Below are positions 1-63,857 of a stretch of DNA of 64,000 nt, in pieces. The notes beneath the pieces are model-generated. The model was not told the DNA's origin. It did no database searches and worked only from the letters and a program-made list of their open reading frames with translations. The stretch is from Ophelia neglecta (taxonomy: Eukaryota): positions 66,278,001 through 66,342,000 of the forward strand of contig OZ260663.1 in the NCBI GenBank assembly GCA_965285935.1, given 5' to 3'. The translations under genes were made by a program, and so were the position numbers. The stretch's first letter is position 1, and every line of letters starts with the position of its first letter.

Positions 1-35
1 AAAATTCAATTAAAAGGCTCTAACACGATATTTAC

Positions 36-191
36 CTACGCAGGTCAAGCCATCTCCACTTTCTTCGAATCCATCAGGGCAAGAACACGTATAAGGTACT
101 CCATCAAAGGAACGAAGATTGTACACCTGGTCATTACAAGTAGCAAATGGATCGCACGTTGACAGGTTTAAAGCACATTCGTCTACTTTAT
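36..191 (-). CDS. Gene A exon 77: calcium-binding EGF-like domain
   Basis: Translates DKVDECALNLSTCDPFATCNDQVYNLRSFDGVPYTCSCPDGFEESGDGLTCV. It has six Cys in EGF spacing, a D-x-x-D-E-C start and a YTCSCPDGF motif, and is a symmetric phase 1-1 exon (ttcag acceptor, GTAAAT donor). Confidence 0.9.
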
Positions 192-3100
192 CTGAAGTTA
201 AAAAACAATTCAAACATTTTTTGTTACTGCTATTAAATTTATGTAGTAGGTAGCAGCGCAATGGCCGGTCTTATACTTTCTGCACCTCCTGATTGTTCCG
301 ACACACGTTTGCAATAAAAAAAATTTAAAACATTAGCGTTTATGCTTAATGGTACGAACATGATAGTGTAATGCCCAACGTACCTCCACAATCAAATATG
401 GTTCGATACAACGCCATATTGTTGCCTTCATTCACCTCAGTCACTGAGTTTCTGCAGTCGATTAAAACCCCAATATAAGGATGGGTCCAGCAGTATTTGG
501 CCGTGTCTTTTGTTAGTGGTATAATCAAATTGGAACCATTAAGTTGGATAACAACCGTAACTGCAGCCGGCAGTGGTTGCTGGAAAACCGACATTTGTTT
601 CAAGTAAATAACCTAGTGAAAACGCAGTTTAACTTTTACTGCACACTATGGCACGGGAACAGTAAGCGTACATTAACCTAAACTATCCGGTAATGCTTCG
701 AACGCAGTTAGATGTGACAGAATATTGCCCAAATTTATACTTCTTTGCACGTATCATTATACAATGTACATTGCCATACTGCGGTCTTAATTAATAAACT
801 ATCACGACATTCATTCGTTTCAATAATCATGTACCTCACCTGCAGCAAAAGCAGTTGTTGATTATCGTAATTTCCAGCTGGAAACAAAGCATCTATTCCG
901 GGATTGTAAAACTCATCTTCGGATATGAAAAAACAGAAATCGAAATGAACATCAGTTCCACTCTGACTGGGAAAGAAGTACCCCCCAGTGACCGTAGCAG
1001 CCACTTCCAAGACAAAATTAGTGGCGGTTGCAGGAACGATGATGTCTAGGTCTAAGTTAGTGATCTCAAACTTCAGTACTGTCAGATCAGTCATACCTGT
1101 AAAACAAAATATCGTAAATTCGACATCTCTTTCAGCTGATCGTTACTGAACGCCTGGGAGTTGTTAACATATAAGAGGCTTACTTGTACAGTGTAAACTG
1201 TCAAAGTTAAGATCCGACGCAACTGCATTGTTGTTTTGTTCATTAGACTCAACAACATCGTTCAATGGGTCAAATTCAGCAATCATCGATATCCTCCCAT
1301 CGAAGTTACAGAGAAACAAAAAGTCTTCAGGTGTTATGGAAATATTTCCCGAAGCTGCAATTAAAATAAACCGTGTGCGGGTGCACATGCTATATCTCAT
1401 AATGAAATATGTAGATAATGCAAGACGGAAGGATTAATTGTGTGTTTAGAAATACCGTATGCTGTTAGTACCTGTAATTGCGCAAGGACTATTGCAAGGA
1501 GATGAAACATCGACGGACAGAAGACTGCCTACGGGCACCTTCAACGGTCCAGCCGCCAATGAAACCTCATATAGATACGAATGGGCGCCTAAAAGAAAAA
1601 GCAAGTTAATACCCGACAGACAAGGCAACAACTTTAAACAATAATTGTCCATTAAATCAGTCCAAAAACATCCGAACAACTGCCACAGGATCACACGCAT
1701 TAATACATGAATCGCCAGTGGCAAAACAATAATCAACTTATAATTAAACTAATATAAAAAAAACATATAAAATTAATATTACTAGTAGAAAATCGAATAT
1801 TTTTCTATGAATTTCGATAACAAAGCGTGAATTTGATGCTTATTTGTCATGTTTGTGCTATTTCGCAACTATGGGTTCAATGTTAGTAAAGCATACCAGA
1901 ATCCTCAAGCAAATGCCCATTCACGCTGAAGTCTACAGTTCCAAATTCAAGTGTATTACCAGACAAAACGGTCAACTCGTTAGCTTCTAAGTCATTGTTA
2001 TCTGGACGTATGAAGATAAAACTTGTCTAAACAGTTCACCAAGAGCATGAAGTCATAGTCTTTTGTCAAGAATAGTGTCAATTGTATAGCTGGACAACTC
2101 GGAACAAAACAGTGTTACGACTGAATCAACCTAAACGAACTTGGAACTTAACAAGCGTTTCCTTACTTTTTAACATATGTCATTGAAAAATAAACTCACT
2201 TCCCAAGCAGTGTATGCTTATCTCCGTAATAAATATGTTATTATCGATGATGAGTTCTGTTACATTAGCCAGACTAGGGTGGTTAGCCTTTCTTATTTTT
2301 AATATTAAATCAGCTTTGTCGGGACCCAATGGCAGTGGCTGAAGATATGCATCACATGCACTAACAAGGTGAACAACTCCTGACAACCTGTTTGAAGTGG
2401 ACGAAAATAAATCAACATATTTGTGTCGTTGTCATTTGTTAAACGCAGGAAAAACAATGAAAGCTATGTGCTCCCTTTTCTGTGCTTACCCGTGGATGCG
2501 AATTTTTTCATTTGCTAATATGGTGTTTCTTAATGTATCATCTTCTCCCAAAGCAAACGACCATTCTGCAGGAGTCACATCGTGCTCTAAATGCATTCCC
2601 TTTCTTCGCACAAACAACTGTCCAGAAACACAGCAGATATACATAACAGTGAATATGTATTACACATAGCAATCTGATGAATCGTGATTATACATAGTTG
2701 GTTGTACCTTTATTTCGAACATGTTGTGTATGCCATCAGAAATCAGATCATCACCGAAGACATTCTCGACATCAAATGATAAAAGAATTGGGCCAGGGTT
2801 ATATTCATATGTCGTGGTAGAAACGTCCACGTCATTCAGTTGGAATACGTCTGCCAAAACCAAATTGAATACATGTATGTGTTTATTTTGCGATTTGGCT
2901 AATTGTGAATATATAACGGGGAATAAGGTCATGTTTACAAATAAAACACTTGTGTAACCCTACCATATTTGCATTGAACCGTAACAGGGATTGCATATCC
3001 ATTGTTGTATTCTGACAATTCTTCCACGCTGTTCATGTCATCAATAACCGCTAACAGGAACACAAGTCCACAAAAATCAGGTGCAACATATGCCGGTATA

Positions 3101-6100
3101 GTCAATTTTTCGACTAGTGAATATAACGTACGTTCTATCACAGTGTTCGTTATATCCGTAAGATCAAGGGCACTAAGCTGATCGTTTCCAGAAAATTCCA
3201 GACTTAAATCCATGGAATCAAACATAGCATTTTTTGATAGATAGAATTGAACGGTAAATGCACTGAGCTGAGCTTTTCCTGCCATTGTAATGGAAACCAC
3301 AAATGAGAAATGATGTTGCGATCCAATCGCCAGTGTTATACTGGTTGGGGACAAAATTAATTTTTTAGCAGAAAAGTCAACGAAATCAATGCTGCATTTA
3401 ATTATGTTTGATACATCCTGATAACGGATGTTATTCTCGTAGATCTTCTCCTTCGTAATAATATGTACACCTTTGTGTATTTCCATAAGCATATATTTAA
3501 GAGTACATGCACTGAGAGGGAGGCGGATTTTCATCCAACCTACGACATCAATTTTTTGTCCTACTTCGGCAGGACCCAACAAAGCCTTTGAAATGCTGTC
3601 TGATATATCAAAAATTGTGATCCTAGTGTCGAGGTCCAGGTCTAGTTTGTTGTCATCTGACAAATACACACATATGAAGAAATTACGTCTTCCATCTGCT
3701 GAGGCTGGTATGTTTTCTCCAAAATTCCAAAATGAGAAATGAACTTCAATTTCTACTTCGACGTCGCTGTAGATAATCGTAACTGGGTCCTTTGGAGCCA
3801 CCATTAAATCAGAAACTGCGAGGAAGTCTCCGTCACAAATCATTAGGTATTGGAAGGCTCTTATGTTGTCCCTTGTATCCGGGTCAACGGAGGTGATGTT
3901 TTTTAGATCCTCTAATTCAACAATAAGATACACGTAGCCACAATAAAATGCTAGGTCCGGATTGTCGGCAACATCTATTCTAAGATTTGCACCATTTATT
4001 GTTATTTCATACGGAGAAGATTGAGAAATACTGATTCCTCTCCTAAGTATAAATTTCTGTTCGGCACTTAACACTATAGGGATCATAGAGTCGTCGGGAG
4101 TTCGGGAGTTATCCAGACTGAGGTACAATTTGAACATCATGCTGTAATCACCAAGATCGGATGGAGATGCCGCAGGGATTGAACCTAGATCGGGTGATAC
4201 CTAACAGTTTAATATTTGGACTATCCCTTAAATGTTAAATCGACTACCTAAGCGCTTGCTAATTATAAATTTCTCATCTACAATGTGTTTGTTCTATGGA
4301 CCTACCACTTGATGTTTTTGTCATCCCTATCTTTAGTTGAAAGTCCACCCACTGATCCGCCTTCAGGTCGGTGGTTGCAGTGCCTTCGTCCTCCAGTCTG
4401 AAGCTACTGACGAACAGGTTTACTTGTTCTAGAACAGATTGGTTACATTTGTACCAAACAGACAGCAATGATTAAGTGATTGTATGAAACGAAAGTTTCA
4501 GCTTGGCAGGTTATATAACATAACTTTCGTTCTATATGGATGTTATCTATATTTACCTTCTTGACAGCGGATTCGATCTTTCAGTGAGAACGAGGCAATG
4601 TCGTTATCTATATATTGGGAGTTCAGTGGCTCGACGGGGACCAAAATGATGAACAATGTTGGCGTATGGCTCATTGCCTGGTTACACACATCCATTGAGG
4701 AAATGTCTATTACTCCTATTAAATATCATTCGATGAAATGTTATTAAATGCGGTTTCTTTGAAGCATTACATACTTTGTCAAGACTTTTTGTGTTTTGTT
4801 TACATAACGGTTAGATATGGGATAGAAAATTGTTTTAAGGGTAAATTCGAACCGGTTAATAGAGGTGTTTGAACTGTCTGTCTGGCTGGAACTTCATCAG
4901 TGAATACAAAGGGCGTTCCATCCATTTTGACAACTGCAGCGCTGTCACTTGCATCTAAATGGTCATCAACAGAGAAGGCAACCTTCATTTCGAAAAGTCC
5001 TGCTGGGATACTTGGAAATCTCTTGCCACCAACATTTACCACAGATGCTATAAAACTTAGTGTTATGGGCATCATTGGCCAAAATGTCTCCGGTTCAGAC
5101 ATTATTGTCACGTCTTGTAGCGCTAGTAAATCATCTAAAAAGAAAATTTTAAAAGTTTTATTATGGATTTGATCATAAAGTCATACCATAAGAAAAAAGC
5201 TTCCTATGTGGCATGAAATCCAATAAGGTTTTAGTATTATATGAATATATTAACCAGGGCAGCTAATGTGTATGAGTCTTTCCAGAGCATTGTTTTGTTC
5301 ATATATGTCAAATCCGGTGATGTAATCAGCCATTATCTCCACTAGCCTGAAACATAATAGCAAATGTTTATCATTCTAAGACGAATCTATCCAAAACAGT
5401 ACATGTGTAAGTCGAATGCACAATATGAAATATTTAAATCAAAATGGTAGAAATGACATTATTTTACCATATTTTGTCACAATATTTTACGCCCTTTGGA
5501 ATAGAGACAACATAGCCAACTATATATTCTTGGAAGACTGCTTCTCCCACGCCCGTGCCAGTAAGACCTTCCACTGGATTTATATTTAACCAGGCCAGTT
5601 CCATGTGAAAATCTGTAGGAAATACAAACAGCACAGATAAGTTGACTATTATGCAAAATTTGAAAATAAGATATAAAGAGCGAAAGTGTTTGCCCATGCC
5701 TTTGGTGTTATTTACGTGGCAGTTAGCCTATGTGACCGCGGATAGATACTTATTGACACAGAATGGATAGCATCATATCATCATGTCAAACATTAATCAT
5801 TTCATTTTGTTTTTATTGACTCTTTCTGGTACTAATGTCCATAAACTTTGACTCTTGCAAGTCATTTTTGATCCCGTTCCCATTAACTGGGTCTGATTTT
5901 AATTCTTAATGACTGATACCTCATATTAAGAGTGCTGTACTAGTTTGTGTTCGTTGTCTCAGTTTTCCGATTCAAACATTGTCACAAAATGGCAACCCAA
6001 AAAATAGGTCAACACTGTCTAAACCTTTAGTGTGACCTTCTAACTCAATTTGATAGCCTTCATCTGATTGTTTTCACTTACATGGTAAACCAAAATCAAG

Positions 6101-9100
6101 GTTGTGAAAATCGCTTAATATGTGGCTTTGTTTGGAAAAAGGTAGAATTTCCTAAAATAAAATGTATTACATCTATACCAGACGAGTCTTATTTCGTTAA
6201 ACAGCTATGAAATACAGGATTTGATCGAATATGTTAGCAAATAATCATGTTTTATAATTACCTTCCTCTGAAGTACCAAACTTGACATGTATCTGTATGT
6301 TATCGGGAAAGAGTGGTGTAGACAAAACAACAGTCCCAATAACAACTGCTTCAATAATAAAAGACACATTCAGGGTATCCCCTGACAACACTGTATCCGG
6401 AAGAGTCTCATCTACCAACCTAATGTCAACCCCATTGATGTCTACATAAAATGTTAAAGTAGTAGCACGAATAAGAATAAACATTAACCAGTCAATCGTA
6501 TTTAAGTCGCATTTTAACTTTCTACTTTCGCCTAATCGGTATGAATTTTATAACATCAATTTACCTGAACAACCTGTGACAACACCAGTCACAGCTGCAA
6601 CATTGTTGCTCTCGTCAACTTCAACCAGTTTTTGGAACCAGTTTACATAAACTGATACCGACACATTTTTATTACAGTGCTTTATCAGTTGATTCCGGTC
6701 AAACACCATATTGGGATCCGATAGTTCTATGTCAAGTCCGTTTATTGGCATTTCAACCAACTTAACTGCCTGAGATGCAGGTAGGTTATAAGTAATATCA
6801 CAGCCTTTGTCTGGAGGTGCAGCATCTATAAATGCATTGACACTACATTTTATAACTCAAATAGAATATTTAATCAATTTTAATCATAAATGATTATAAA
6901 CCAAACAAGAAATATAAATGCTTATCTAATAGAGTGTATGCAACCATAGATAGCATTGAGACGAACAAGTATTAACTATTATTTTACGACATTGGATATG
7001 AGTTTAGGCACCCGATATAAAGAACGCCAGGCCAAATTTCGGTAGATTCTTCGGATAAGTTGGCCACACTGATCCTGCCCAGCTGATATTCATGTTCATG
7101 GGCAGCGTAGGAGTTTTGGATGCGTTGAAAATAATTCCGGAATCCTTGGCATCCAAAAGGAACGATCTAATTAGCAGATCCACGTGAACTGTCGAATTGT
7201 TAATCAGATAAGATACAGACTATGTTAATTCCTTAACATAAAACATCATTTTACAATAACTTGCAATAATTCATTTATTTCCACTGTTGCCTTGCACGCA
7301 ATGCCGAGACCAGGCTCGTGTGAGTTTGTTTGAAAGATGTTTAATGTTTCTTAATCTTCTCAACTTACAATCAGGGCATTTAAGTTTGAATGCTACAATG
7401 CGCACGTTATTATCAGTGATGGTCCAGTTTAGTGATTCTGCTTGTTGGCTGTCTCCTTTTACCATTTCTAATCCCATGTAGGCGATCTTAGCACAATCGT
7501 TTGATCCGTCCACAGCAAAGTGCCCTGATATATTTATTTGCACTTTGTTGTCTGTAAGAGCATTATAAAACAGGAAATCATTTTAGGAAACTGTATGATA
7601 TTATATATTTGAATATCCTATGTTATATTAGGGCAATGCTCAGGTTGCTACATCAGTATAAAAAACGGGAGTGGATACATACTTTGCGAAAATACACTTA
7701 TATGGTAGGTATGTTTCTGACCTGAAGCTACGGAGAAATCTGTTTGTAAAGCATCTGCAGGGGCTATAAATGTGTTATCATCGTAGTCGCCCAAAACTTC
7801 AGAAGTCCAAAATGCGTCAATTTCTGATGGATTAACGGTTCCAATTTCTTGTTGGTCTTTGGTAAAAGTCTTAAATAGAATAAGAACATTATCTTAACCA
7901 TCAGCACTATATCTTAATAATTCTTAATTAGTCAACTCATTTGTCAAAACCTCAATAAAACAAACCTTTATTTTGAAGTAAAAGTGCACCGGTAAAGAAA
8001 TGGAGCCGTGTGATGCTACAATAGGGCAAGAATCGGCAATGCACGTTACTTCTGCAGCGAACTTTATCAGCGCGGTCTCTCCGGATTGTATCCCGGCGGA
8101 AGGTAATATGATCTCCAAAGAAGATATCTCAAATGCGTCTGCCAATGAACAAATCGTATTTTATCATTCACAATTGAAATAAACATGTATTATTAATATG
8201 TCGCTATTGTGTTTTAACGCATGGTGCCATGAAAAGTATTTCATTAAAAGGCAGATTGTAATGTTTACCGTCTTGGCAGACAACATAGACAGGAGTGGCG
8301 TGAACATTGTTCACTTCATTTGTTTCTTTTATTATATTTGTTGAGTCCAGTTGTACAATGACGTATGTGTGTCCACAGAACCGTTGCTTCAAATTGTTTG
8401 GAATGTCCAGCGTCTCAGTTATTGTGCCACCAATTCCCAGGATTACCATGGAAACATCATGAGGGATAATGATGTCCAACTCATCGATTTCTTCATCAAC
8501 TGACAGCCAAAGCAAGAACTCAGAGGAATCTAGGAATAGATTTATCAAAATAATATTAATCAACTCATGCATGTCTCGATGAGATAAGTGTTCCTTAATT
8601 TAAACAAAACTGTGGAATGACATATGCGATCAAGGTATCTGTTTAATTTTAACAATCTATTATAAACGTTAATAGAACGTGCCTATGACTTCAGACGTAA
8701 CGACAGTTACGTCCAAGGTAAAGTCTGTACTTGCACCAAGATTCAATGGTCCAGCAAAGAAAAAGTCACCAACTAACATATCTGTGCTTTCTGAAATAAT
8801 TAAAAAGCATATCATCTAAACGGTGAAAGTGTACATCATCTTTCCAGGAATAAAAAGCATCTGCTTGATTTATTAGGATATTTTGTAATAGAGTTTCTCA
8901 TTATCAGTACATATACGTTATCATTTCATATACTCGCACATATAATTTATATAGTTTCCAGATAAGCTCCTCAATTGTCTTTTAGGTATATTGTTACAAA
9001 AATACCATGCTATGATACACATAACACGTTACTAAACATGTTTACCATGCTATGATACACATAACACGTTACGAAACATGTTTTCCATACCTGTACAAAT

Positions 9101-30980: not shown

Positions 30981-31056
30981 ATGGATAAAATGATGCGATC
31001 TACAATTATATTAATTCTGATGAGCATGAACTTGGATATAACAGCTGCCACTGAAG
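30981..31056 (+). CDS. Gene B exon 1: signal peptide
   Basis: Translates MDKMMRSTIILILMSMNLDITAATE. The phase-1 donor G|GTGCGT joins in frame to VDVVLSGFEYRLSGAKLYQD through a TAGCAG tandem acceptor. Confidence 0.8.
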
Positions 31057-52000: not shown

Positions 52001-55000
52001 ATTGATATAAGGAGTCCCCTCACACCAGGATACAACACAACTTTCTGGATGGACCTTACCATCGTAAATGTAGGAATAGACATCCCTATGTCTGCGTCAA
52101 TGGATCCTAGTTATACGCTCCGTATATATGCCAGTGACAGTCCCGTGTTTCATGAGGGCACACATATTGGTATCACAAAAGCAGGAGCAGTAAAATTCAC
52201 TAGTGAATTTGATACCAACCAGCCTTTGCCAAGTGGGAAGGCTCTTTCATTCGAACGAGTTCAGGTAGAAACCCTTCTTTGGTAAATGTTTGTCAGAACA
52301 ATATCCAAATTATGCACAATACTGAAGAACATCAACACTAAAAAAGAGATATCGACGTTTACATTAATTCATCTTTCATATCAAATATATTGCTCTCCTG
52401 CGTTAGTAAGAACTTAAACAAGATAGAGTGGCTGTTCTTTGCGATTATCTTCTGAGCATAATATTTCCAAGGTGTCGACTAGTGGGGCATCATTCACTCA
52501 GATCCAATGCCAGTCGACTACACACCTGCTGGTATGTGTCGAGGTCGGAGCGGGCTTCACTGATAATGTCACCACCAACAATTGTAAGACGCATATACTG
52601 ACCCTCGGCCAGACGGACTGCAGCGATAGCCAGTGTGAGTTAAAGTTCATTATCAAATATACCGGAGGAATGGTGCAATGAAGGAATTCAAACAAAATAT
52701 GATAATAACGTTTCGTTCTCTTTGTAGCAATGCGAGATATTGAAATGCTGCAAATAACTGCGCCTGGAAGTTTGAGCAGCCCTGGAACAGTTGATGTGAG
52801 ACACGACATACGGATCACAATTGGCGTTGGTAGCCTGGCCGTGACCAGTGGACAGTTTATATCGTCCGCATATCTGTCCAAAGACAAATTCCTTGATAAA
52901 CTATTGGATCTAAAAATACTGGAAGTCCAGAACTCTATTGGTGGGTAAATAAATATATGACAGAATTCATTGCATATACAATTAAACAATATTACCGTAA
53001 TTACGAAAAATGATTGCGTACATGTTTGTCTTTTTGGAATAAGCAGACGACTTTTTTCTGTTGTTTTGACAGACCAGGCACCGGGATCAGTGCGAGTTCA
53101 TACAATTGAACAAACGGCTGGCTCTGTTGTTGAACTTACGGACAAGTCATTATGCGGAAACGTGTATATCCTCATTCAGGTTGACTCGGAGGATGACATT
53201 CAAGAAGTGGATGAACACAATAATGTGGCATTTAAACAAGTGGTCGTTCTTTGTAATTCCGGTAGGTACACCGGTGCTGTGACATTCATAGCACACAATA
53301 CACCATTTTAAAACATACTAGTACAACTCGTACTAAACAAATGTAGACTTTATTCCCTTTTTGTTTACTTCAGACTTCTTTTCTATATCAAACCCGACAT
53401 TATTAATCTTGGATGGACATCTTGTGAGCGGGGGATCCATGTGGTTTGACTTGTGGACTGATATCACGTGTTCAAGAGGAACCTGTGACATTGATGTGGC
53501 TACAGATAATGTGAAGCTTAAACTCAGTTCAGCGGCAGACGGTGCACCACTTGTTGAGCTGGCCTCGATAACCAGTGACTGGACCGCGAATGGAATGTTA
53601 GCCACCCCTTCACTTGGATCTTCTTTCCTAACTCCATTTCAAACAAGGCATGTCAGTTAACCTTCTTTCATATTACTAGAGACGTATGTTAGGATGAAAC
53701 ACAATATAAACTACTGATTTGGTTTGTCTGACTGTTGTTTTGCCCCATGACAGTTTAATATTTTAGTGCTCGATCAGTAATAGGAAATGCATATGGTTAT
53801 TGTTATAGATATGTTTACTTAATCAGGCGTTTTCACATTGCGGGGACATTAAACATACCTGCTGGACATTGTGGGAGCACGGGGAGTCATCGTGTTGTTA
53901 TAGAGGTAGACCTAGGTGCCAGTCTTACAGGGACAACGGACGGAGTTGGCGAAAACAACATAGTAACAATACCATATCTTTGTGTCAATGGTAATTGATT
54001 ATTTTCTATCTCATACCCAACACCCAAGAAAATGATTATCCCTATTTATAGCAAATAATTTCTTTAAAACAAACAGCAAGTGAACCGCCGGAATATCAAA
54101 AGGTTATTGACAACCAGCCCAAGACAAAGTTATGTCTCTTCAATCATTGATGAAACTCTCTCGCTGAGCCAAATATCCTTTTGGACTTCAGATTTAAATG
54201 TCATAACATATTATACCTAATTGTGGTAATTTCTGGCACACATATGGACAAATGAAATAGTACTGCATTAATATTTATGTTTTGATTAAATCATGGCACG
54301 AGAAAGTGATGATCATTTCCCCAATTTTCAAATGACAACAAAAGAGGTATTATGAATGGCGTAACTCTGCTTCAAAACATAACTGTTTATGTCCAGGTAC
54401 ATCCCGCGATCTGGTGGCCAATCAATTGTTGTTTTTGGGAGGAGATACTTTGTCTCATAAGAAAAGAGCTAAATTCTCACTACAAATAGACTTGATCGGG
54501 GACGCCCTTCCTCCTACTGACACTTCACCCCCTGCGGCACCTTTTACCTTTGCTCTCTACATTTCTGATGATGCGACGTTAAGCGAGGATGATGTGAGGC
54601 TAAGCTATCAACTGACGGAGAGCACAGCAGGCGATCTGAACAAAGGAATACCTGCAGACAGCTCATTAACTTTAATCGAGTTCGTTGAAGGTAATTCCAT
54701 TGTGCTTGAATGACCTCTTTCTGAACCACTTATATGAGATACATATTAAAATACTCAGTGTTTAGTCGGAAATATTTAAAATGGTAGGCTTATCTTTTTT
54801 CTAATGGAACGTTCATAAATCAGCGTAAACTTACCTTATACACTATGGTTATACTTTACTGATCGCACCATTAGATTGTATACTTAGCCGTGATACACTA
54901 TATTAGGTTCTAGGACATAACGCTCTATCCACCGACTACCTCCCCCCCCCCCCATTCACCCACCCCAATGACCTCCAAAGTTATAAACAAAGCAATTTAA

Positions 55001-58000
55001 CATTACATATCTCAGGTGTGGAGTTACCTTTTGGCCACTGTGGTCGGCAATACATAATTGTCTACATCGATGACACTAATAAGATCGATGACTCAGTTAA
55101 AAGCAACAATATCGCTTACAGGGAAGTGTATATAGATTGTGAAACAGGTGCGTGTACAGCTATATGTTAAATGTGATTATTCATAACACCGCTATTTACC
55201 GTTAATTGGGCAAGAACAGGATTCATAAAAATTCCGTGTTTAACATTCTGATTTGTAGATGTGTATGCCGTCGAAGCTTTGTGGACACGCCTTCCAGCAC
55301 ACGTGTTTCACAACACACCGGTGGAACTGAATTTTGCACTCTCTGTGGGAAATGTCGGGCAGCATGACACTATGTCCTATGGTGGAAAATCTCCCCTTAC
55401 GCCGTTCGTCGCCTTAACAGCCGATTATCAAAGGACTTCGTTGCCACATAATACTCTCACAAATATTAGTGTACACCCAGGTTATTGCATTTTGAATTTT
55501 AACTGTTATGCCCTGTGTGTTCAAGGGGAATAAAATGTGGCTAGTACTTATTATCTTGCGCTGTCAGTTCAGCTCGATATACTGGTAATTCACTCAAATA
55601 GAAACCGTTTTGATGGCCACTGAATTATTTTGAACCGCGTCATTAATTGGTTGAACTTCAACCGACATTTATAATGGATCATACAAATGTCATTTCATAA
55701 TATTATACGGTTTTTATAAATAACTGAAGAAAAAGGAAAAGTTTTTTTGTAACATTTAAAGTGCAAGATAACAAAACGATGATATTTTTTGCAGAAACAC
55801 AGGCGCTGTTGTCCCAGGGCATCAAGGCTGGCGAAATAATTACATATGTTGGATTCAGTGTGGAATTGATTGTAGATTCCAACAAATGTTCAGACTACAA
55901 ATACTTGATGTTTGGCGTTTTACCTGACTACAATTCACCACGGCTGGAGACATACCTAGATAATAACTATGAAGTTAGACCAATCAACATTGTTTGCACT
56001 GGTATGACTTTCCTTATTTGTTAGGATAAAATTGGTTCAAATATTTAGATATCTCAGATAAGACAAAACAAATTACTTACCTGTTACTATACTATTAATA
56101 CTCATATGTTTAAAGATGCGGTAGATATTGCGGTTACCAACTTCGGAGTTGCTGGGAATTTAGTAAAAGGCCAGAATCGAGATTTCACTTTAACTGTTAC
56201 TGCTGTGGTGCCCTCAGACGGTGAAATGGGTAAATTAATTTCAATTTTATAATATCTTAACGCATCTTTATTATACCTATTTGATATTAAGTAATACATA
56301 TGTGTAATCAAATGTGTTAAACATCACGCTATTCATTTATGTTAATAAGACGTCAAGCACTAAACAATATAGTACAATAAGAGACCCGTCGTTCTAACCT
56401 GTTGCGTGTGCCTAAATATAATTTAGCAGCTTCCCATCAGGGTGTATGCTATCAGGGTGTTGTTATCTGGAACATAATATCAGCCTCTTTAGTGCCTGAC
56501 ATAAAAATTTCATCATTTAAACAGAATGTAAAGGCCTCTTTCTTCTTGTACATGGTGATTTGTGACATAATACTACTTTTTTACTGTCCTTACTTTGTCA
56601 TACAAGTTCTTTGGTGTATGCATAAGATATTACACATAGCGTTTTTGGGGGGGGGGGGGGTGGAGGGATATTTCCTTTATTATGTTATATTAATGTTATT
56701 GTTTTTTCCTAGTTAATTTCGTCTTTTGTTTTTCTCTGCACATTGTATGGTGAAACATTAATAATTTAGAAGTTATATCTGATGTGGGGGTACATACACC
56801 AGTGTGGTGTCCTTCTCGCTTTGTCATGAAATGTCATTAGGCTACTGGTATATGATTGTATATCATTTGTATATGTCATAGTTGTTTCTTTTCATGGCAA
56901 TAAATTCAAATTCAAATTCAAATAAGTTTAAGTGACAGTGTTCAGTAATTTGTTTTTAGCTCCATTCAGCTATTCCTTCTGGTTGTCAACTGATAAAACC
57001 CTGGAGAGGACACATGATGTACCCCTCTCCGTAGTCATAGCCCCAGGGATGCCATTTGCTGATCCTCTAACAGCCAGCATCCCTTCCTTGGACATCAGTG
57101 GTACTGGAGATAACGGGGTTCATATACCGTCCAGTCTACCAGACTTCCTCTGTGGCAAAGTCTACTTACTTGTACAAATAGACTCCGATTATGAAGTTAT
57201 GGAATCTGACGAGGACAACAATTTAGGCTTCACCGAAGTAGTGTTGGAGTGTGAAAATGGTAAATATATATCTTTTAAGTGCCTATTGCCTCAAGGAAAC
57301 CAACGCTGTACAAAAATGTGTGTCTATCAATTAAAAACAAAATCTCGCATATTGAACATAAAATGTTTTAGTTACAGGGAAGGGACACATATGCCTTAGG
57401 TTTCCAATCCTTCTGATTTATTTCTATTTGTGCTACTTTTTATTATTGCTGTGTTAAGTCTAATCTATGAAGAAGTTTCATGAATGCGCATTGCATATAA
57501 CATAAAACTTAAGTAAATTTGACTTGAATATGAAATATGTGTGTATTTATCGTCTGTTCTTTTTCCAAACAGACTTGTTCAGTGTTGTCGATTTGAACGT
57601 TACATCAGGATCTTTACCTGCCTTGCCGGACGTGGTTCTTCCGTTATATTTAGATTTCAAATTGGCATGCATTAAGACGGACAGTTCATGTCCTAGTGCT
57701 CCAGCAAATCCCAACCAGGTTCACTACACATTCGACATAAAGGTACATTTGTTGTATAATGAAAATTCGACCCAATACGAACTCGACCTACTGGTAAAAT
57801 GATAGGGTACAAGAGTTAAAGCATAGGTACAGTGAAACCTGTCTAATCAGGTCGGTCAAGGGACTTGAAAAAACTGACCACATTATCCAGGTGACCTTAA
57901 TAGGCACGTCAGTTAACACAGGCATAAATGGAGATTGTGCTATTAGTAAGTGACCTTAATGGTCAGGTGACCTTATAACACAGGTGACCTCAAACACAGG

Positions 58001-61000
58001 TGTCACTGTAATTGGAGCAGTGGAAGTGTTAACAGGTTTACAATACTGTATAATGAAATCTTAGAGTATTGTCTACCTTTTCGTCGTCGGACGGGGTCCG
58101 AATGGGTCGAGAACGTCTTAGGCCGAAAGCATACTCGAGTCATTTACATAATTATAAAATCACATCGTGTAAGACATTTGTAAGAAGATATTTGTGATAG
58201 TAAATATATCCAACCAAACTCCAATTCAAAACAGAATGCACTGTCCATAAATTTATCTTGATGGTCTACAATGCTTTGTTTGCCCAGTACGCATCGTCTT
58301 TCATATAGGTATACGAAGAGGGTGGTTACGAGGTCGGCGCCATGAATCCCATGAGCATCGATCCTACATGGATAGCTTCCCAAGAGGGTGTTGAAGAGGC
58401 AGGCATTTCGCCAGCGAATGCCTTAGCCCTGGACTTTTCAGATATTACAAAAGGTAATAAACAGTTTATTTTTTATCATTGTGAGTTTAGATACTTAATT
58501 CCAATTATTAACACCGACGTGATATAAACTGTGCACATTTAAATATTTTCATTCTGCTTCATTTAATTAAAGAATATGCAATTTCAATATCCGGAGGCTT
58601 CCTTCTCGGCACCATTGAAGTATGCTCTAGAATAAGATACATTGGCATTCAAGTCATCAAAGGAGACAGCGATGAGCTGTCGCCATTGGCCATGGGACCA
58701 GACTCCAGCAACCGTCGTATGGTTCCTTTCACTTTTAAGTGCAGGACAGGTAGGGCACATATTTGTGTTGAAATATAAGAAAAATGTAAGCAGTAACATG
58801 GGCTATTATACACCGCCTAACCGTTTAAACCAGTATGTTATATACTACATTTAATATGGCAATGACAAAACATATATTTTATGTTTTACAGAATTTGCGG
58901 ACATTTGGGTTACAAGTTTCACTTTGCCTTCTGGCCCAAACGTGGATATTTCCGACGGCATTATTAACTTCCAGCTGAATGTCCAAACATCGGCTTCGAA
59001 CCAGCCCCCAAACACCCTCAGAAAGCCCATTTTCTCGTATAAAATATCGGCTTCTGGTACGTTTTAGCAAATTAACGTGACTTATCACAATAATCTTGTG
59101 GGTTAAACAAATATCCGCCATATGCCCAGTATATACAAAACATGCGTTACACAGAGGGAAACTAATTCATTCAGGAATCAGAGTACAATGAACATTATTT
59201 TTTAACTCATTTTACAGATGATGGCTTATTATCGGATGATGACGTTGATCTGGGTTATACGCCTCCTGCGAATATAGAGAGTATGCTTAGGGTCGAATTT
59301 GAGAGCTATCCCAGCCTGGATCTGTCTGATATGGCATTTTCCGTCTCCCCAGAGCAAATAGCACACTTATGTGGGTTGCCGGACTCTCATCTTATACTTC
59401 AGCTGGACCCTGCGAATGCTGTAGACGAGACTGATGAAAGTAACAACATAGCCACCACACCAATCACTATCTCAGGGTGTAACAGTCAGTATTCATATTA
59501 ATTAATACTAATAAATAGGTGGAACTTACCATTTTAGCCTCACTTTAAAGCCACGTACTGAGGTTTGAATATTATTCGTTTGGTTGTTTGCAAAAACTTG
59601 CTGATACTATCTTTCATAAGCAAGTCATTTTTTTTTTAGATGGATTTGATCTGAAGGTGACATGGTTCCAATCCCCGAGTGTTGTAGTGTCAGGCCAGGA
59701 GATTGACTCTCTTGTAAACGTCAGTGTGGTTATAATAGGCGGCCTGTCTTTGCCAATAGGACTGGTGGAAGAGAGTACGGCTTATTCAAAATACACGTTA
59801 TCATTTAGCCTTCTAGACAATATAAAGAACCCATTAGAAGGTATGAGGAAATTATATAGGATATATAATTGCAACTTGATTAAAATTCGTTACGTTCATC
59901 CCTCAAATTTTGTGAAATTTTACATAAATTTTCCTTACTCATACATTAATCTTTTGTCCAGTGCACACTATAGAATTTGACACGACAGAATTGAATGAGT
60001 TGACAGAGCCATTACAAGCTGATTCCCTCGAATTAAATCAGTCTGGCGTGGCTTCTGTAATCCACAGAAGTCATCATGGACCACCACTCCGAATACCAAC
60101 AGATTATGTTTACTGTGGACGGTCATGGTAAGAGTTGTTGCTTGTTCTATTACTTCTCCTCTTGTTATATATTTGGTCTGTTTTGGAATCCTTATTTGGG
60201 CATTTTCAAGGTCACAATGCTATGATATTTGTTTCCGTATTTTATAGGTATCTGGAGGCAAGGGTAGACCTCAATCAGACGTATTCTCTAGTTCCCGATT
60301 TATGGCCTGAGGACAACAGCTTGTACAAATACATACACATTATATGCCCAAGTAAATATTAAGACATTTTTTTTGATAATAAATAAAATGTTAATGATCA
60401 CCTACGACTAGATCCATGGACTTTCAATTTGTTCATTCATCACAGGTGACCACTTGGCGCTGTTAAACTACCAGATTGAGTATCAACCAGAAGTCTGGAG
60501 ATCAGAATCAGTCAACCATATTGACTTCTATATCTCCGCAATCAACTACGGGGATCGAATTGAGAAAGGAACGACTAACTACATTTTTGCGATAGAACAA
60601 TATTTTTCACTGGACAGTGTCTTAGACGGCTCAGATATACGGCAGACGGTCAAGATGGCTGGCAACTACGACTACGACTATAGAGAAGCTTCAATGGCTT
60701 CTGGTCAAGTTGTCACATCTCCACTTGTGTCGGGTAACAATTCACCATTCCTTTCATTTATGCAATATAGAAGTGACGTGGCTTCAACAGACTTTCAGGT
60801 TATTATCCTGATATATAATTTAAAAATACTTAAATAATGGAATGCGTTTTTTGGTGCAATTGCCCTGTAGGTCAGCTGAACTTGGACTCTATGATAACAT
60901 GTGATGCAGCAGTCGCTCAAAATGCGGAACCGACTCTTTTCTGGAAACTTGTACCTGGAGATCCTGACGACTCCGCTTACATCGATAATGATATCATGAA

Positions 61001-63525
61001 ATTTCCTCTGGATAAGAAAATTTTCAAATGTGAACAAGGTTTGTTTTTGGTTGGCCTATTGCTCTTTATTCCTCCTTCGAAGCTGTATCTTTAATTCAGA
61101 GAACTGACTTCATTGTTTGTCTTTAGCAAACGTTGATCTGAAAGTTACGCAGCTGACACTGGATGGAGATAATATAATTCATGCTGGACTAGTAAAGGGT
61201 TACGGACTCACTATATCTCAAACTAAGGTACACGGAACTTTCAAACATACTAAATTGCACTTAACTGTACAAAAACGTAAAAATAAATAATTAAATATAT
61301 ATATATATATATATATATCTTGACAACTGGCCTTCGTAGAGCCAACATTGCAAATTGTTGATTTGACCAATGCAATGCATACTATTTTTCATGCCCTAGA
61401 CCGAATATGGTAGAATAGACGCTTCCCTTGGAGAGGAGTTGAGTTACCGTTTTGACTTCTACTTAAGCAAAAATGACAAGCTTGATGTGGATACGGATGC
61501 CAAATTGGACATAGCGTTTTCAGAGGACCAGTTGAGCACAATGAGGGGCGGTGTGCTTCCAGACACTGACTCGGATATAGGTAAGGCTCTTCTTAAGGAC
61601 ACCTACCACATACACAATATTATACCATATACATTTCCTTTCAGTTTAGATGTTGTATGCCCTCTTAATATGTAATTTTCGTGGGTTATGAATGATGTGT
61701 TAAAAGGTGTGTATCATCTACAGATCTCCGGGGTAATAATCTTCTCGTTGACCTTGAAACCCGGCCGGATCTCGGATTTTACTGTGGGAGTGTATACCTG
61801 ATTACTACCGTCACCGACCTGATGAATGCGGGAGATTTAGATCCTGTAATGGACCCCGTACTCGACAATAATATTCTCGTATATGCCACAACTCTGCTGT
61901 GCAATCAAGGTACAAACTATATGTCGCATCAAACCATTTCTTTGGTGTAGTAAGAATATTGGTCTTTTTTGGCTCACTTAAAACAATACTGCTTTTATTA
62001 ATACCGACAGATGTTATTAGTTTTGAAAAACTATCGATGAGGCCAAATCCTCCCCAAGAACAATTGTTTGGCTTTCATCCTGCGGAATTTACGTTTATGG
62101 CCGAAGTGAAGAACTATGCTGTCACTGACATCATAGGAAGTTTGGATCGTCCAGTTATCACATTCCGAGTACGTTTAACTAAAGTGGATTATTTTATGTT
62201 ATTTTACTTTTTTAGTGGTAGCTCAGATGCCCTGCTTCGCATGTATTTGACACATCGGATGTACATATAGTACAAATAATAGCATATTACGTTATAGCTG
62301 AGATGGTAACTCTGCTTTTGGCAGATAATATACAATGTTTGTCAGGTTTATACTTAATTTGATGCTTGTCCAAGGTAACAAATACCTTTGGCATTCTATA
62401 TTGCCGTAAAAGTGCTTTTCCTTCATTCCGTAGGCTTTTTTGTCTCAAAACCAACGACTAGAAGTGTTAACTGATCCAGAGATAAGCATGGCAATTCCTG
62501 TATCGCTGACGGACGATACAAAACGTGGTATCCCTGCTGGAGGTGCACGTTCATACATGGCCTCCGTGAATCTAACAGCTGACTTAAGTGTTTGCACATA
62601 TCAACCCAAATATATTGTGATCCTTGCCCAGAAAGGCGCTCACTTAAACTTGGAGGAAATAGTTATAGGAAACAACTACTTATCCATCAATTTCCAGGAG
62701 TACCTTAACTGCACTTTGAGTAAGTCATCTGTAGTTGGCCTAAGTGTACTCTTTATCATTCTGGAGTATATGACGATTCCTTTCGTTGCTGCCGACGAGT
62801 ATCTAGTATGTTTAATACTTTATAGGTACATCTGACGCCATGATAAAAAGCTTCATAATACCTTCTACATCCATGTCCCCTGGAGAAGAAATATCATTTG
62901 AGTTGACCATAGAGGTCAGTTCCAGTATCGGTCCTGCTCCAGGCATTGAATACCAGTTTTATCTGAGCAAGGATATTAGGGTGGACAGAGACGATACGAG
63001 CCTCCAGTACAGCATGCAAGATCACGTGGCCATGCTCGAGGGATTGCATGAACAGAACGCACTTTTTCAGCTAGACAGTGTAACAGAAAACATTGTATGT
63101 ACTATTCCGTTCTATGTACTATTCCCGAAACGTTTATTTTGCCAAGTAGATTTCTGATTTTCATCATTTTAGTTTGAAAAGTGTTTTTCTTGTCTTTGTC
63201 ATATACATAACGATGATCTCGTATTTCCATTTCGATTTAGGTTATACCAGCTAACGTCGATGCTAAATACTGTGGAAACTCCTACTTGATAGTTTACGCC
63301 GATAATAACGAATCGCTTCGGGAGACCAACGAGCTCAACAATATGTTAGCCTCACCCATAGTGTTAAACTGCTACCAAGATATGTACGAGTTAGGTGTCA
63401 GCTTCATTAACCTACAGGATGAGTACTTTATGGCTCCTGGCACCTTACATATCTCCTTCACCGTATACAACAGATTAGGAGAAACAATACCAGAAGATGT
63501 GCTATATCCTCCCTTTGTATTAAAG
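30981..63525 (+). CDS. Gene B: paralog of gene A with signal peptide, 30 complete CARDB-like domains and the start of domain 31; 72 coding exons, >=4544 aa, probably continuing beyond the right edge
   Basis: Manual splice tracing gives an open frame (sum 13632 nt). Exons: 30981-31056, 31288(or 31285)-31407, 31555-31760, 31901-32042, 32238-32443, 32727-32883, 33312-33386, 34437-34625, 34864-35124, 35797-35883, 35994-36120, 36678-36919, 37249-37385, 37495-37585, 37921-38142, 38307-38594, 39321-39539, 39865-39978, 40595-40759, 41229-41423, 41704-41973, 42830-42994, 43100-43588, 44204-44358, 44697-44884, 45008-45114, 45223-45302, 45428-45616, 45998-46139, 46293-46438, 46668-46793, 47594-47750, 47972-48097, 48201-48356, 48640-48810, 49097-49357, 49511-49681, 49809-50126, 50251-50370, 50481-50951, 51132-51328, 51421-51586, 51807-51881, 51975-52264, 52472-52634, 52728-52940, 53073-53261, 53374-53647, 53827-53990, 54397-54690, 55016-55147, 55259-55480, 55795-56001, 56116-56229, 56960-57259, 57573-57742, 58309-58453, 58573-58749, 58892-59056, 59218-59484, 59640-59840, 59974-60127, 60248-60351, 60446-60733, 60871-61038, 61127-61227, 61400-61580, 61724-61909, 62011-62168, 62434-62719, 62826-63094, 63241-63525. 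Motifs include CGRPYLIVVLDTADLIQEADELNN and CGKVYLLVQIDSDYEVMESDEDNN. Homology to gene A is colinear throughout. Confidence 0.88.
33088..33117 (+). repeat. G-rich (GGGGGT)n tract, G-quadruplex-capable, intronic
   Basis: GGCGGGGGTGGGGGTGGGGGTGGAGTGGGG in the gene B intron 32884-33311. Confidence 0.6.
36179..36372. mobile_element. Degenerate fold-back / MITE-like element in a gene B intron
   Basis: GC-richer island with nested imperfect inverted repeats: CACAGTTTGGAAACCGCC...GGCGGGTTTTCAATCAGTG, GCATCACTGAAAC...GTTTCAGTGCTGC and CTCACAA...TTGTGAG. No clear TSD. Confidence 0.5.
44021..44061. repeat. (TA)n microsatellite
   Basis: About 13 perfect TA units plus a degenerate extension, in a gene B intron. 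Confidence 0.9.
56320..56922 (+). mobile_element. 5'-truncated, decayed non-LTR retrotransposon (LINE; CR1/L2/Jockey-like 3' end)
   Basis: Reads KQYST(frameshift)RSNLLRVPKYNLAASHQGVCYQGVVIWNIISASLVPDIKISSFKQNVK, resembling the HxYxTR...GxxxWNxLP...SxxxFKxxLK C-terminus of LINE ORF2. It is followed by a T-rich 3' UTR ending in AATAAA (56899) plus a (TTCAAA)x3 tail. The 5' boundary is approximate. Confidence 0.75.
57830..58008. mobile_element. 179-bp Tc1/mariner (pogo/Tigger-like) MITE
   Basis: TA|CAGTGAAACCTGT ... ACAGGTGTCACTG|TA: 13-bp TIR with one mismatch and a TA duplication at 57828-29 and 58009-10. Four internal GTGACCT subterminal repeats; no coding capacity. Confidence 0.85.
61296..61318. 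repeat. (TA)n microsatellite
   Basis: About 11 TA units in a gene B intron. Confidence 0.9.
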
Positions 63526-63841
63526 GTGACGTGCTATACCATTCAATTAATTTAACCTTTTAATGTCATAGAATCAGGATGTAACATAAAGTTTTAAAAG
63601 ATAAATGCTATTGATTTGGAAAACTCAGGGATTCAAGGAGCTGCTAAAAATTACAAAACAAAAATTACGTCGAGAAAAGAGGTAGTTACAATGATCACAT
63701 ATAGTGAGAATTAGTCAATAGTTTTCATGAGATGAATCAAACGATAAAATAAAATGGCTAGTAGTCAGCGTAAAACGAGGAAGAAAAATGCCCTTTATGA
63801 ATCAACCAGTTATTCAAATTACCAAGCGGAAAGATGATCGC

Positions 63842-63857
63842 GGGGGGGGGGGGGGGG
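63842..63857. repeat. Poly-G homopolymer (16 nt)
   Basis: Visible directly. Similar tracts occur at 56647-56660 (G) and 54942-54953 (C). Confidence 0.85.

What the first reader, a model, noticed from the sequence alone, without database searches (positions are those of the whole stretch)
36..63525. Candidate undescribed system: head-to-head pair of ~500-kDa paralogous CARDB-like repeat proteins kept in exact domain register
Seen: two divergently transcribed genes 1.94 kb apart, each a signal peptide plus >30 tandem ~145-aa domains. Domain n of A matches domain n of B for all 31 comparable positions (LSGAKLYQD in D1; QEWPH..LTQCQR / TQWPH..LTECQR in D6; GWVART..PVF / GWSDRT..PVF in D13; TPTGAFNGG / TPTALNGG in D16; PDLAFYCG / PDLGFYCG in D28). 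No domain has been gained or lost despite low overall identity and unalignable introns. Established: head-to-head paralog pairs such as COL4A1/COL4A2 share a promoter and co-assemble. Inference: fixed register plus a shared upstream region suggests stoichiometric co-expression and side-by-side A/B assembly into a Ca2+-stiffened extracellular rod. At 4-5 nm per domain that would be roughly 130-165 nm, for example a tether, egg-coat, cuticle or adhesive fibre. I recognise no named gene.
Basis: partly seen in the sequence, partly recalled or inferred. Interest (0 to 1): 0.92.

Follow-up and report, generated by a model that had tools for sequence, protein, structure and literature searches.

The report
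Head-to-head giant CARDB-repeat membrane proteins
Two back-to-back, anciently duplicated genes of an invertebrate each encode a roughly 8,000-residue membrane-anchored surface protein with 33 CARDB-type domains joined to a MUC4-like module; the family is real and uncharacterised, but nothing tested here shows that the two proteins pair up.

Summary
Gene A (minus strand, ATG 29039) and gene B (plus strand, ATG 30981) start 1,942 bp apart. Each encodes a short signal-like peptide followed by 33 acidic CARDB-fold domains of about 145 aa. The cognate domain is the best match in 29 of 33 rows, with no whole-domain gain or loss.

The window holds only about 60% of each gene. In flanking DNA both continue through EGF, TSP1, a NIDO-AMOP-VWD module, a PKD-like domain, about 25 calcium-binding EGFs, a second TSP1, a transmembrane helix and an acidic tail. 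They are therefore type I membrane proteins of about 8,000 aa, related in their C-terminal halves to MUC4, SUSD2 and Mesh. They are not free secreted fibres.

The duplication is old. B groups with a homolog from another organism (98/97 support). A and B are as diverged from each other (27%) as from an annelid homolog.

Those homologs keep the same domain-for-domain register. Fixed register is thus a property of the family, not evidence for A/B side-by-side assembly. Co-expression, calcium binding and heteromer formation remain untested; no RNA runs exist.

Homologs are annotated only as hypothetical or uncharacterised, and no paper on them was found. I rate it a new variant of a known kind, of moderate interest.

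The parts
36..29039 (-). Gene A, in-window part: exon 1 to the first EGF exon, about 75 predicted exons. It continues about 18.4 kb beyond window base 1.
   Evidence: ORFs and collinearity; homology-guided gene model; homologs P0004 and P0007 aligned by tblastn.
28973..29039 (-). Gene A exon 1: ATG plus a short hydrophobic signal-like peptide (MMTSQLVSFIILLLW...). The donor is CAG|GTAGAA, phase 1.
   Evidence: It is paralogous in form and phase to B exon 1.
388..28973 (-). Gene A array of 33 CARDB-like domains (D1-D33).
   Evidence: Repeat HMM hits and domain table; Pfam CARDB hits on exons.
2938..4200 (-). Open frame of 421 aa containing gene A's predicted 1,221-nt exon (2964-4184). It covers the end of D28 plus D29 and D30 without introns, and is conserved as a single ORF in at least 12 other assemblies.
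   Evidence: AlphaFold2 model with mean pLDDT 83; best PDB matches are the CARDB structures 3IDU (Z 9.8) and 2L0D (Z 9.0).
36..191 (-). Gene A first EGF-like exon after D33.
   Evidence: Pfam cEGF, EGF_3 and FXa_inhibition hits on ORF 13-270; exon model.
29040..30980 (.). The 1,941-bp spacer between the two start codons, a candidate shared or bidirectional regulatory region. It has no internal inverted symmetry.
   Evidence: DNA contigs of three runs cover it except for a repeat at about 30,467-30,564.
30981..31056 (+). Gene B exon 1: ATG plus a short hydrophobic signal-like peptide (MDKMMRSTIILILMSM...). The donor is AAG|GTGCGT, phase 1.
30981..64000 (+). Gene B, in-window part: exon 1 to the start of D31. 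It continues about 22-27 kb beyond window base 64000.
31290..63372 (+). Gene B CARDB-like domains D1-D30. D31 begins at 63388; D31-D33 end at window coordinate 66,176, outside the window.
43100..43675 (+). Gene B exon holding a complete CARDB-like domain (D9) in one piece.
   Evidence: Repeat HMM positions 2-154, E 1.3e-30; exon model.

Best explanation
The window contains the 5' halves of two divergently transcribed, anciently duplicated genes. Each encodes a giant type I membrane glycoprotein of about 7,700-8,100 aa as predicted. The predicted order of parts is: a short signal peptide; 33 acidic CARDB-fold beta-sandwich domains; 4-5 EGF; TSP1; EGF; NIDO-AMOP-VWD; a PKD/Ig-like domain; about 25 mostly calcium-binding EGF; TSP1; a juxtamembrane region; a transmembrane helix; and an acidic cytoplasmic tail. 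The C-terminal half places them with the NIDO-AMOP-VWD surface proteins (MUC4, SUSD2, Mesh). Where MUC4 has its mucin repeats, these proteins have a 33-domain CARDB array. Each of the 33 domains has its own conserved identity, and this identity is kept in homologs from other phyla, so the A/B register is inherited family architecture. Inferred mechanism: each protein projects an extended, negatively charged and possibly calcium-stabilised stalk of the order of 100 nm or more from an apical cell surface, acting as a spacer, tether or adhesion molecule towards an overlying matrix or neighbouring surface. Only B keeps a GDPH motif in its VWD domain, so B may be cleaved into two associated subunits as MUC4 is. 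A and B are most likely long-diverged, sub-functionalised paralogs. They may share regulatory DNA, but no evidence shows that they must assemble with each other. Shown here: gene arrangement, domain content, register, fold, membrane anchor and age of the duplication. Inferred: location, rod shape, calcium binding, cleavage and function.
For: Arrangement and register. CARDB identity: Pfam CARDB reaches 23.6 bits against a cut-off of 22.7 on one exon, with weaker hits on others. It reaches 89.4, 44.3 and 35.2 bits in homologs P0007, P0004 and P0009. Atlas neighbours are all CARDB clusters. The AlphaFold2 model (pLDDT 83) best matches the CARDB structures 3IDU (Z 9.8, rmsd 3.3, 107 aligned) and 2L0D (Z 9.0). 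C-terminal architecture: tblastn with the L008 ORFs finds EGF, NIDO and cbEGF exons on the correct strand at window coordinates -450 to -15,217 for A and 66,015 to 83,631 for B. Pfam on single exons gives TSP1 at 41.5 and 30.5 bits and VWD pieces in both genes at E 1.5e-4 to 2.6e-3. Pfam also gives weak AMOP (E 0.039) and weak NIDO (E 0.13) in B. In the homolog L008, NIDO scores 81.9 bits, AMOP 26.3 bits (cut-off 25), a VWD start follows, and there are 14 EGF_CA stretches. Transmembrane helices are visible in both genes, followed by K/R and acidic tails. GDPH is found only in B. Old duplication: B groups with L008 at 98/97 on 1,992 columns. On the D28-D30 region, A groups with P0001 at 98/98 and B with L008 at 93/89. 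L008 scores 1,261 and 838 bits against B but 439 and 493 bits against A. Per-domain identities are A-B 27.4%, B-L008 30.8%, A-Owenia 29.9% and B-Owenia 28.9%. Only A and B match the 421-aa exon in this 762-Mb genome.
Against: The gene models are my own splice-site, coding-potential and homology predictions without RNA support. Some exons are wrong: there is a retained in-frame intron in B D1, a missed A D18 exon and a mis-framed A transmembrane exon. The 3' ends of both models are uncertain. AMOP and NIDO are below Pfam cut-offs on the window genome's own exons and rest mainly on the homolog L008. No expression data exist for either gene. Signal peptides and transmembrane helices were judged by eye. 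All tree branches are long and the program warns of possible long-branch attraction. Nothing tested here excludes A/B interaction.
Confidence: 0.62

Rival explanations
1. One reading: A and B are co-expressed from a shared bidirectional promoter and assemble side by side, domain n against domain n, into a calcium-stiffened heteromeric rod. With the new data, that rod would be anchored by two transmembrane helices.
For: Head-to-head start codons lie 1,942 bp apart. Both paralogs have stayed intact, with 33 cognate domains, over a very long time. The composition is strongly acidic. A CARDB crystal structure was deposited with bound metal ions (3IDU). Both proteins have the same overall architecture and a membrane anchor.
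Against: The register is equally kept in homologs of other organisms, so it needs no A/B pairing to explain it. No co-expression data exist. The spacer shows no symmetric or shared elements. A distant amphioxus homolog has an unrelated PRMT gene upstream. B has GDPH and A does not, which argues for different processing. No interaction test was possible.
Confidence: 0.12
2. Both are functional but act as homo-oligomers or monomers in different cell types (pure sub-functionalisation). The head-to-head position is then only a relic of an inverted tandem duplication.
For: Divergence is deep at 27-33% identity. Only about 45% of predicted intron positions are shared. The GDPH status differs. A keeps a three-domain exon where B has five or six exons.
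Against: Retention of the divergent arrangement over such a long time hints at shared regulation, but this was not testable here.
Confidence: 0.2
3. One copy is a decaying pseudogene, or the inverted pair is an assembly artefact.
For: There is no RNA evidence. One A exon needs a weak acceptor and A D18 lacks the usual C-terminal motif. Short-read contigs break at a repeat at 30,467-30,564.
Against: Open, phase-compatible paths exist through about 135 exons in both genes. Each copy has its own closer relative elsewhere. At 33% identity the pair cannot be a haplotype or an assembly duplicate. Contigs from three runs cover both first exons and nearly the whole spacer.
Confidence: 0.04

Closest known systems
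MUC4 (transmembrane mucin, sialomucin complex)
   Same: It is a type I membrane protein with a long N-terminal extended region, then NIDO-AMOP-VWD, EGF domains, a transmembrane helix and a short tail. It has a GDPH autoproteolysis motif in VWD, which gene B also has. GDPH cleavage in MUC4 is described in PMC8660890, as listed.
   Different: There are no Pro/Thr/Ser-rich mucin tandem repeats; S+T+P is about 20%. In their place stand 33 folded CARDB domains. There are also two TSP1 domains, about 30 EGFs rather than 3, and a PKD-like domain. Gene A lacks GDPH.
SUSD2 and Drosophila Mesh (smooth septate junction protein)
   Same: They are invertebrate and vertebrate membrane proteins built around NIDO, AMOP and VWD.
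   Different: Mesh and SUSD2 are about 800-1,450 aa, carry a Sushi domain, and have no CARDB array or long cbEGF run. No Sushi domain was seen here, but this was not searched exhaustively.
Prokaryotic CARDB-domain surface proteins (Pfam PF07705; structures 3IDU and 2L0D)
   Same: The domain fold and the C-terminal motif (D..v.E.nE.NN) are shared. Tandem arrays occur on cell-surface proteins.
   Different: These are animal genes with about 135 mostly phase-1 introns, fused to metazoan EGF, TSP1, NIDO, AMOP and VWD modules. The domains are about 145 aa against about 100 aa and carry conserved cysteines.
Giant repeat adhesion proteins: ADGRV1 (35 Calx-beta), cadherin-23/protocadherin-15, Dumpy
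   Same: The working analogy is a membrane-anchored protein with dozens of acidic beta-sandwich domains forming a long link in which each repeat keeps its own identity across species.
   Different: The domain families are unrelated. This is a functional analogy from general knowledge and was not tested here.
COL4A1/COL4A2-type head-to-head paralog pairs
   Same: Divergent orientation of paralogs with a short spacer.
   Different: A shared promoter, co-expression and heteromer formation are established for collagen IV but are untested here.

Membership tests
CARDB domain (PF07705) | Match to the Pfam model at or above its gathering score | tested here: met
   Exon 16554-17036 scores 23.6 bits against a cut-off of 22.7; other exons score 19.2-19.4 bits. 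Homologs score 89.4, 44.3 and 35.2 bits. Most single domains are split by introns and score below the cut-off on their own.
CARDB domain (PF07705) | Beta-sandwich fold closest to solved CARDB domains | tested here: met
   The AlphaFold2 model has mean pLDDT 83. The top two of 48,161 chains are 3IDU (Z 9.8, rmsd 3.3, 107 aligned, 20% identity) and 2L0D (Z 9.0).
NIDO-AMOP-VWD membrane proteins (MUC4 / SUSD2 / Mesh) | NIDO domain | tested here: met
   The homolog L008 scores 81.9 bits. Its NIDO region aligns to both A (-4125 to -5330) and B (71,557 to 73,946). B's own exon is only weak, at E 0.13.
NIDO-AMOP-VWD membrane proteins (MUC4 / SUSD2 / Mesh) | AMOP domain between NIDO and VWD | tested here: inconclusive
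   The homolog L008 scores 26.3 bits against a cut-off of 25. B's own exon gives E 0.039, and A's exons give no hit.
NIDO-AMOP-VWD membrane proteins (MUC4 / SUSD2 / Mesh) | VWD domain | tested here: inconclusive
   Exon pieces match the start and the end of the model: B at 22.6 and 19.0 bits, A at 18.5 bits, against a cut-off of 22.9 for a whole domain. The pieces are collinear and together cover profile positions 4-44 and 94-155.
NIDO-AMOP-VWD membrane proteins (MUC4 / SUSD2 / Mesh) | C-terminal single transmembrane helix with a short cytoplasmic tail | tested here: met
   Hydrophobic stretches of about 23-26 residues, followed by K/R, lie after the last TSP1 in B and in A. They were read from the sequence; no predictor was run.
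Mucins (MUC4 sensu stricto) | Pro/Thr/Ser-rich O-glycosylated tandem repeat region | tested here: not met
   The N-terminal 4,900-5,300 aa are folded CARDB domains. S+T+P is 20-21% and there are no PTS repeats.
Co-assembling head-to-head paralog pair (COL4A1/A2 type) | Divergent orientation with a short shared upstream region | tested here: met
   The ATGs lie at 29039 (-) and 30981 (+), 1,942 bp apart. Transcription start sites are unknown.
Co-assembling head-to-head paralog pair (COL4A1/A2 type) | Co-expression and physical heteromer | not testable with these tools
   No RNA run holds the sequence. No multimer prediction or experiment is available.
Co-assembling head-to-head paralog pair (COL4A1/A2 type) | Arrangement conserved in other species | tested here: inconclusive
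   The amphioxus homolog P0009 has a PRMT gene and a 123-aa ORF upstream, not a paralog, but it is only about 23% identical. The Owenia and L008 loci do not reach the 5' neighbour.

The most novel reading that the evidence does not exclude
A and B are obligate partners. Two membrane-anchored chains would pair in parallel, domain n with domain n, through calcium-bridged acidic CARDB surfaces. This would form a 130-160 nm double stalk on an apical surface, a previously unknown kind of long cell-surface link built from a domain so far described only in prokaryotes. The divergent gene pair would have been kept together since before the split of distant animal lineages so as to hold the two chains in 1:1 dosage.
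Probability: 0.1. Interest if true: 0.75.

Novelty: new variant of a known kind. Interest (0 to 1): 0.48.

Why it matters
CARDB stands for 'cell adhesion related domain found in bacteria', and the 15 papers found that mention it as a domain are almost all about prokaryotes. Here a 33-domain CARDB array is the main body of a conserved animal surface protein. The array is joined to the NIDO-AMOP-VWD module known from MUC4, SUSD2 and the septate-junction protein Mesh. This suggests that the MUC4-type membrane stalk exists in a folded-domain version as well as the mucin version. It also defines an uncharacterised family present at least in this invertebrate and an annelid. More distant relatives (about 23-25% identical) exist in amphioxus. 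The family keeps 33 individually recognisable domains over very long times. Two intact paralogs in divergent orientation offer a clean system for asking whether gene arrangement serves dosage coupling. None of the functional ideas has been tested yet.

Tried and rejected
1. Pfam on the largest ORFs alone gave only weak CARDB hits. Homologs and fold search were needed to settle the domain type.

2. Foldseek with the three-domain model returned only multi-domain beta-sandwich proteins such as integrin alpha legs, at low TM-scores. This was uninformative. The exhaustive aligner then found the CARDB structures.

3. The search for homologous proteins with P0007 residues 1-3300 found only the query itself, because the word index is too insensitive at 25-30% identity.

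4. Literature searches for CARDB with EGF or extracellular matrix, with AMOP/NIDO/VWD, and with animal groups gave no paper on animal CARDB arrays. One apparent zebrafish hit was 'CARD' followed by a footnote mark.

5. RNA evidence: no RNA run holds this DNA. The three runs that do hold it are genomic.

6. Synteny in other species: the Owenia locus stops 10 kb upstream of a partial model with no called gene to walk from. The L008 contig starts about 650 bp before its first ORF. The amphioxus homolog has an unrelated neighbour.

7. The spacer has no inverted symmetry beyond the coding D1 motif.

8. Antisense and intronic ORFs of 100-200 aa have no Pfam family and were dismissed as chance.

9. 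The first two rounds of my gene predictor missed exons and suggested domain losses in A. Inspection showed the exons are present.

10. Joined spliced models were built and compared only inside local scripts. They were not sent to any search, fold or family tool; those searches were done exon by exon by reference.
Full report
WHAT IS IN THE WINDOW

The window is G000:C5:66278001-66342000 of a 762-Mb, 223-contig eukaryotic assembly. Other notes of the scan call the organism an invertebrate. GC content is an even 35-42%. Stop-free exon-like ORFs lie almost only on the minus strand from 28,805 down to 13, and on the plus strand from 31,281 to 63,552. I call these gene A (minus strand) and gene B (plus strand).

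Best blastp hits of A's ORFs against B's ORFs are collinear along the whole length at 30-45% identity. The few exceptions hit the generic C-terminal motif of other repeats.

STARTS OF THE GENES

Upstream of the two D1 exons I found a pair of similar short exons.
- A's runs 29039-28973 and encodes MMTSQLVSFIILLLW....
- B's runs 30981-31056 and encodes MDKMMRSTIILILMSM....

Each has an ATG, a hydrophobic core, a good GT donor and phase 1, and each is followed by an acceptor that opens D1 in frame.

The spacer has no inverted symmetry. The only notable inverted repeat is the coding LSGAKLYQD segment of D1 itself, at 28731-28777 and 31300-31346.

THE REPEAT

Pfam gives CARDB on several exons: 23.6 bits on 16554-17036 against a cut-off of 22.7, and 19.2-19.4 bits on two others. 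The ESM Atlas neighbours of the 421-aa exon are all CARDB clusters.

A regular-expression scan for the motif C..Y...D...E..E.NN finds 22 strand-consistent sites. A repeat HMM built from the window converges on a unit of about 146 aa. Its consensus starts DLAVTDF... and ends ...LCG.KVYLIVVVD..N.VEE.DE.NNVA...V.L.C.

An AlphaFold2 model of the 421-aa exon, made with an 18-sequence alignment, has mean pLDDT 83 and shows a partial beta-sandwich followed by two complete ones. Of 48,161 representative PDB chains, the two best matches are solved CARDB domains: 3IDU (Z 9.8, rmsd 3.3, 107 residues, 20% identity) and 2L0D (Z 9.0). The domain is therefore CARDB by both sequence and fold.

The array is very acidic, with D+E 13% and K+R 5-6%.

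GENE MODELS AND DOMAIN COUNT

No RNA is available. I therefore wrote a small exon-chaining predictor. It scores:
- a periodic Markov coding model;
- splice-site matrices re-estimated from its own output;
- a bonus for in-frame similarity to homologs, to the paralog and to the repeat HMM.

It ran on the window plus 60 kb of flank on each side, fetched from G000. These joined models were used only inside local scripts.

The final models have 138 exons and about 7,970 aa for A, and 135 exons and about 8,090 aa for B. They are approximate. Known errors are:
- an in-frame intron kept in B D1;
- a skipped A exon, for which a phase-compatible exon 12706-12509 with a good donor exists;
- a mis-framed transmembrane exon in A.

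A and B align globally at 33% identity over 6,895 columns, with no gap of domain length. The repeat HMM plus this alignment gives 33 domains in each protein, paired one to one.

In a 33 x 33 matrix of local alignment scores, the cognate domain is the best hit in 29 rows and 28 columns. The diagonal mean is 114, and the off-diagonal mean is 37 with SD 14.

THE GENES DO NOT END IN THE WINDOW

ORF 13-270 (minus strand) is an EGF domain. Homologs carry EGF, TSP1 and NIDO after the CARDB array. tblastn with these homologs finds further exons on the correct strands, at window coordinates -450 to -15,217 for A and 66,015 to 83,631 for B.

The predicted C-terminal 3,000 aa of both proteins read, in order:
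- 4-5 EGF;
- TSP1;
- EGF;
- NIDO;
- a cysteine-rich AMOP-like region;
- VWD;
- a PKD/Ig-like domain;
- about 25 mostly calcium-binding EGFs, many on 126-nt exons;
- a second TSP1;
- a juxtamembrane region;
- a hydrophobic helix followed by K/R;
- an acidic tail.

Exon-level Pfam gives the following:
- TSP1 at 41.5 bits (A) and 30.5 bits (B);
- VWD pieces matching profile positions 4-44 and 98-153 in B (22.6 and 19.0 bits) and 94-155 in A (18.5 bits);
- a weak K319L-like PKD hit;
- weak NIDO (E 0.13) and weak AMOP (E 0.039) in B.

In the near-intronless homolog L008 the same region gives NIDO at 81.9 bits, AMOP at 26.3 bits (cut-off 25) and then a VWD start. The next ORF has 14 EGF_CA stretches.

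A's transmembrane helix (...ALITYTLAVFFSMLVLLLLALAVFYLLRK) is visible in another frame of the exon my predictor mis-framed, and its acidic tail ends at about -18,360.

Both genes therefore encode type I membrane proteins whose C-terminal halves carry the NIDO-AMOP-VWD module known from MUC4, SUSD2 and Mesh. Only B has the GDPH motif, the site where MUC4 is reported to be cleaved. At the same place A has SGNGL, the Owenia homolog has GGPH and L008 has GMSH (MUC4 cleavage is stated in the abstract of PMC8660890, listed).

RELATIVES AND AGE OF THE DUPLICATION

An exhaustive HMMER search with the 421-aa exon found 85 proteins, 16 of them below 1e-30. The named ones are:
- 'unnamed protein product, partial' of the annelid Owenia fusiformis (P0004);
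- 'hypothetical' and 'uncharacterized' proteins of Branchiostoma (P0009, P0087, P0088, P0015).

More distant hits are bacterial CARDB proteins. About a dozen ORFs of roughly 400 aa from unannotated assemblies match the whole three-domain exon.

P0007 lies on a 23.7-kb Logan contig (L008). That contig encodes about 4,800 aa of CARDB repeats, then EGF, NIDO, AMOP, VWD and cbEGFs, with only four short interruptions.

In this genome only A and B match the exon.

Trees and scores place A and B apart:
- On D28-D30, A joins P0001 (98/98) and B joins L008 (93/89).
- On 1,992 columns covering D22 to the EGFs, B joins L008 at 98/97, to the exclusion of A, Owenia and amphioxus.
- L008 scores 1,261 and 838 bits against B, but 439 and 493 bits against A.
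- Mean per-domain identity is 27.4% for A-B, 30.8% for B-L008, 26.5% for A-L008, 29.9% for A-Owenia and 28.9% for B-Owenia.

The branches are long and the tree program warns of possible long-branch attraction. Even so, three data sets agree that the duplication predates the split from the L008 organism. It is about as old as the divergence from an annelid homolog.

About 45% of predicted intron positions and phases are shared between A and B. Phase 1 dominates, at 93 of 137 introns in A and 94 of 134 in B.

WHAT THE REGISTER MEANS

The Owenia protein aligns to A in one alignment of 2,121 columns (D22 to TSP1). L008 aligns to B in one alignment of 3,881 columns (D11 to EGF). Gaps of domain length would have broken such alignments.

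In a four-way alignment, every domain from D11 to D33 has 100 or more aligned columns in nearly all pairs. Per-domain conservation between A and B correlates with that between B and L008 (Spearman 0.52, p 0.011).

The 33 domains are therefore individually constrained across the whole family. Keeping the register needs no A/B contact.

OTHER CHECKS

Three public runs hold the DNA, and all are genomic. Their contigs cover both first exons and the spacer, except for a break at a higher-depth repeat at 30,467-30,564. At 33% identity the pair cannot be an assembly or haplotype duplicate.

An amphioxus homolog (about 23% identical) has a PRMT gene upstream rather than a paralog. The Owenia and L008 loci do not reach the 5' neighbour. 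Conservation of the arrangement therefore remains open.

Literature searches found no paper on animal CARDB arrays.

VERDICT

The best reading is a pair of ancient paralogs for giant membrane-anchored surface proteins, an uncharacterised CARDB-array variant of the MUC4/SUSD2/Mesh kind. They probably form long acidic stalks or tethers on an epithelial surface. I rate the interest as moderate: the architecture is new and conserved, but nothing yet points to a new kind of system.

Noticed in passing
window 30,400-30,600: A short repeat in the spacer. Summed contig depth rises by up to about three quarters (18-49 against 13-28 in neighbouring bins). The contigs of all three genomic runs break at 30,467 and 30,564, with loose ends running into other sequence.
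   Followed up: partly
L005:9821-9988 (window coordinate about 73,830, outside the window): Gene B's VWD domain starts with the GDPH autoproteolysis motif known from MUC4. Gene A, the Owenia homolog and the L008 homolog lack the Asp or the whole motif at the same place.
   Followed up: partly
window 2938-4200 (-) versus 61,127-63,525 (+): A keeps D28(end)-D30 in one 1.2-kb exon, and at least a dozen other assemblies hold this as a single ORF. In B the same three domains are split into five or six exons.
   Followed up: partly
window 31,281-31,781 (+): B's D1 ORF reads straight through what looks like an in-frame, AT-rich intron of about 50 codons that has no counterpart in A. My model keeps it, which probably makes B D1 too long.
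   Followed up: no
window 12,492-13,381 (-): A's D18 is short. It appears to lack the usual C-terminal D..E..NN...C segment, and its second exon (12706-12509) has a weak acceptor.
   Followed up: partly
L008 (Logan contig of SRR23372228, 23,696 bp): A B-type homolog is encoded almost without introns: a 3,469-aa ORF plus four neighbouring ORFs separated by 70-270 bp. This contrasts with about 135 exons here. The source organism is unknown, and the contig could be a transcript.
   Followed up: no
both genes, whole models: About 70% of predicted introns are phase 1 (93 of 137 in A, 94 of 134 in B), and many C-terminal exons are exactly one EGF (126-132 nt). This is the classic signature of exon-shuffled extracellular modules.
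   Followed up: no
window 29,300-31,900: The three genomic runs differ from the assembly, and from each other, by many SNPs and small indels (2-9 bp) in the spacer and first introns. This suggests high heterozygosity or different individuals.
   Followed up: no
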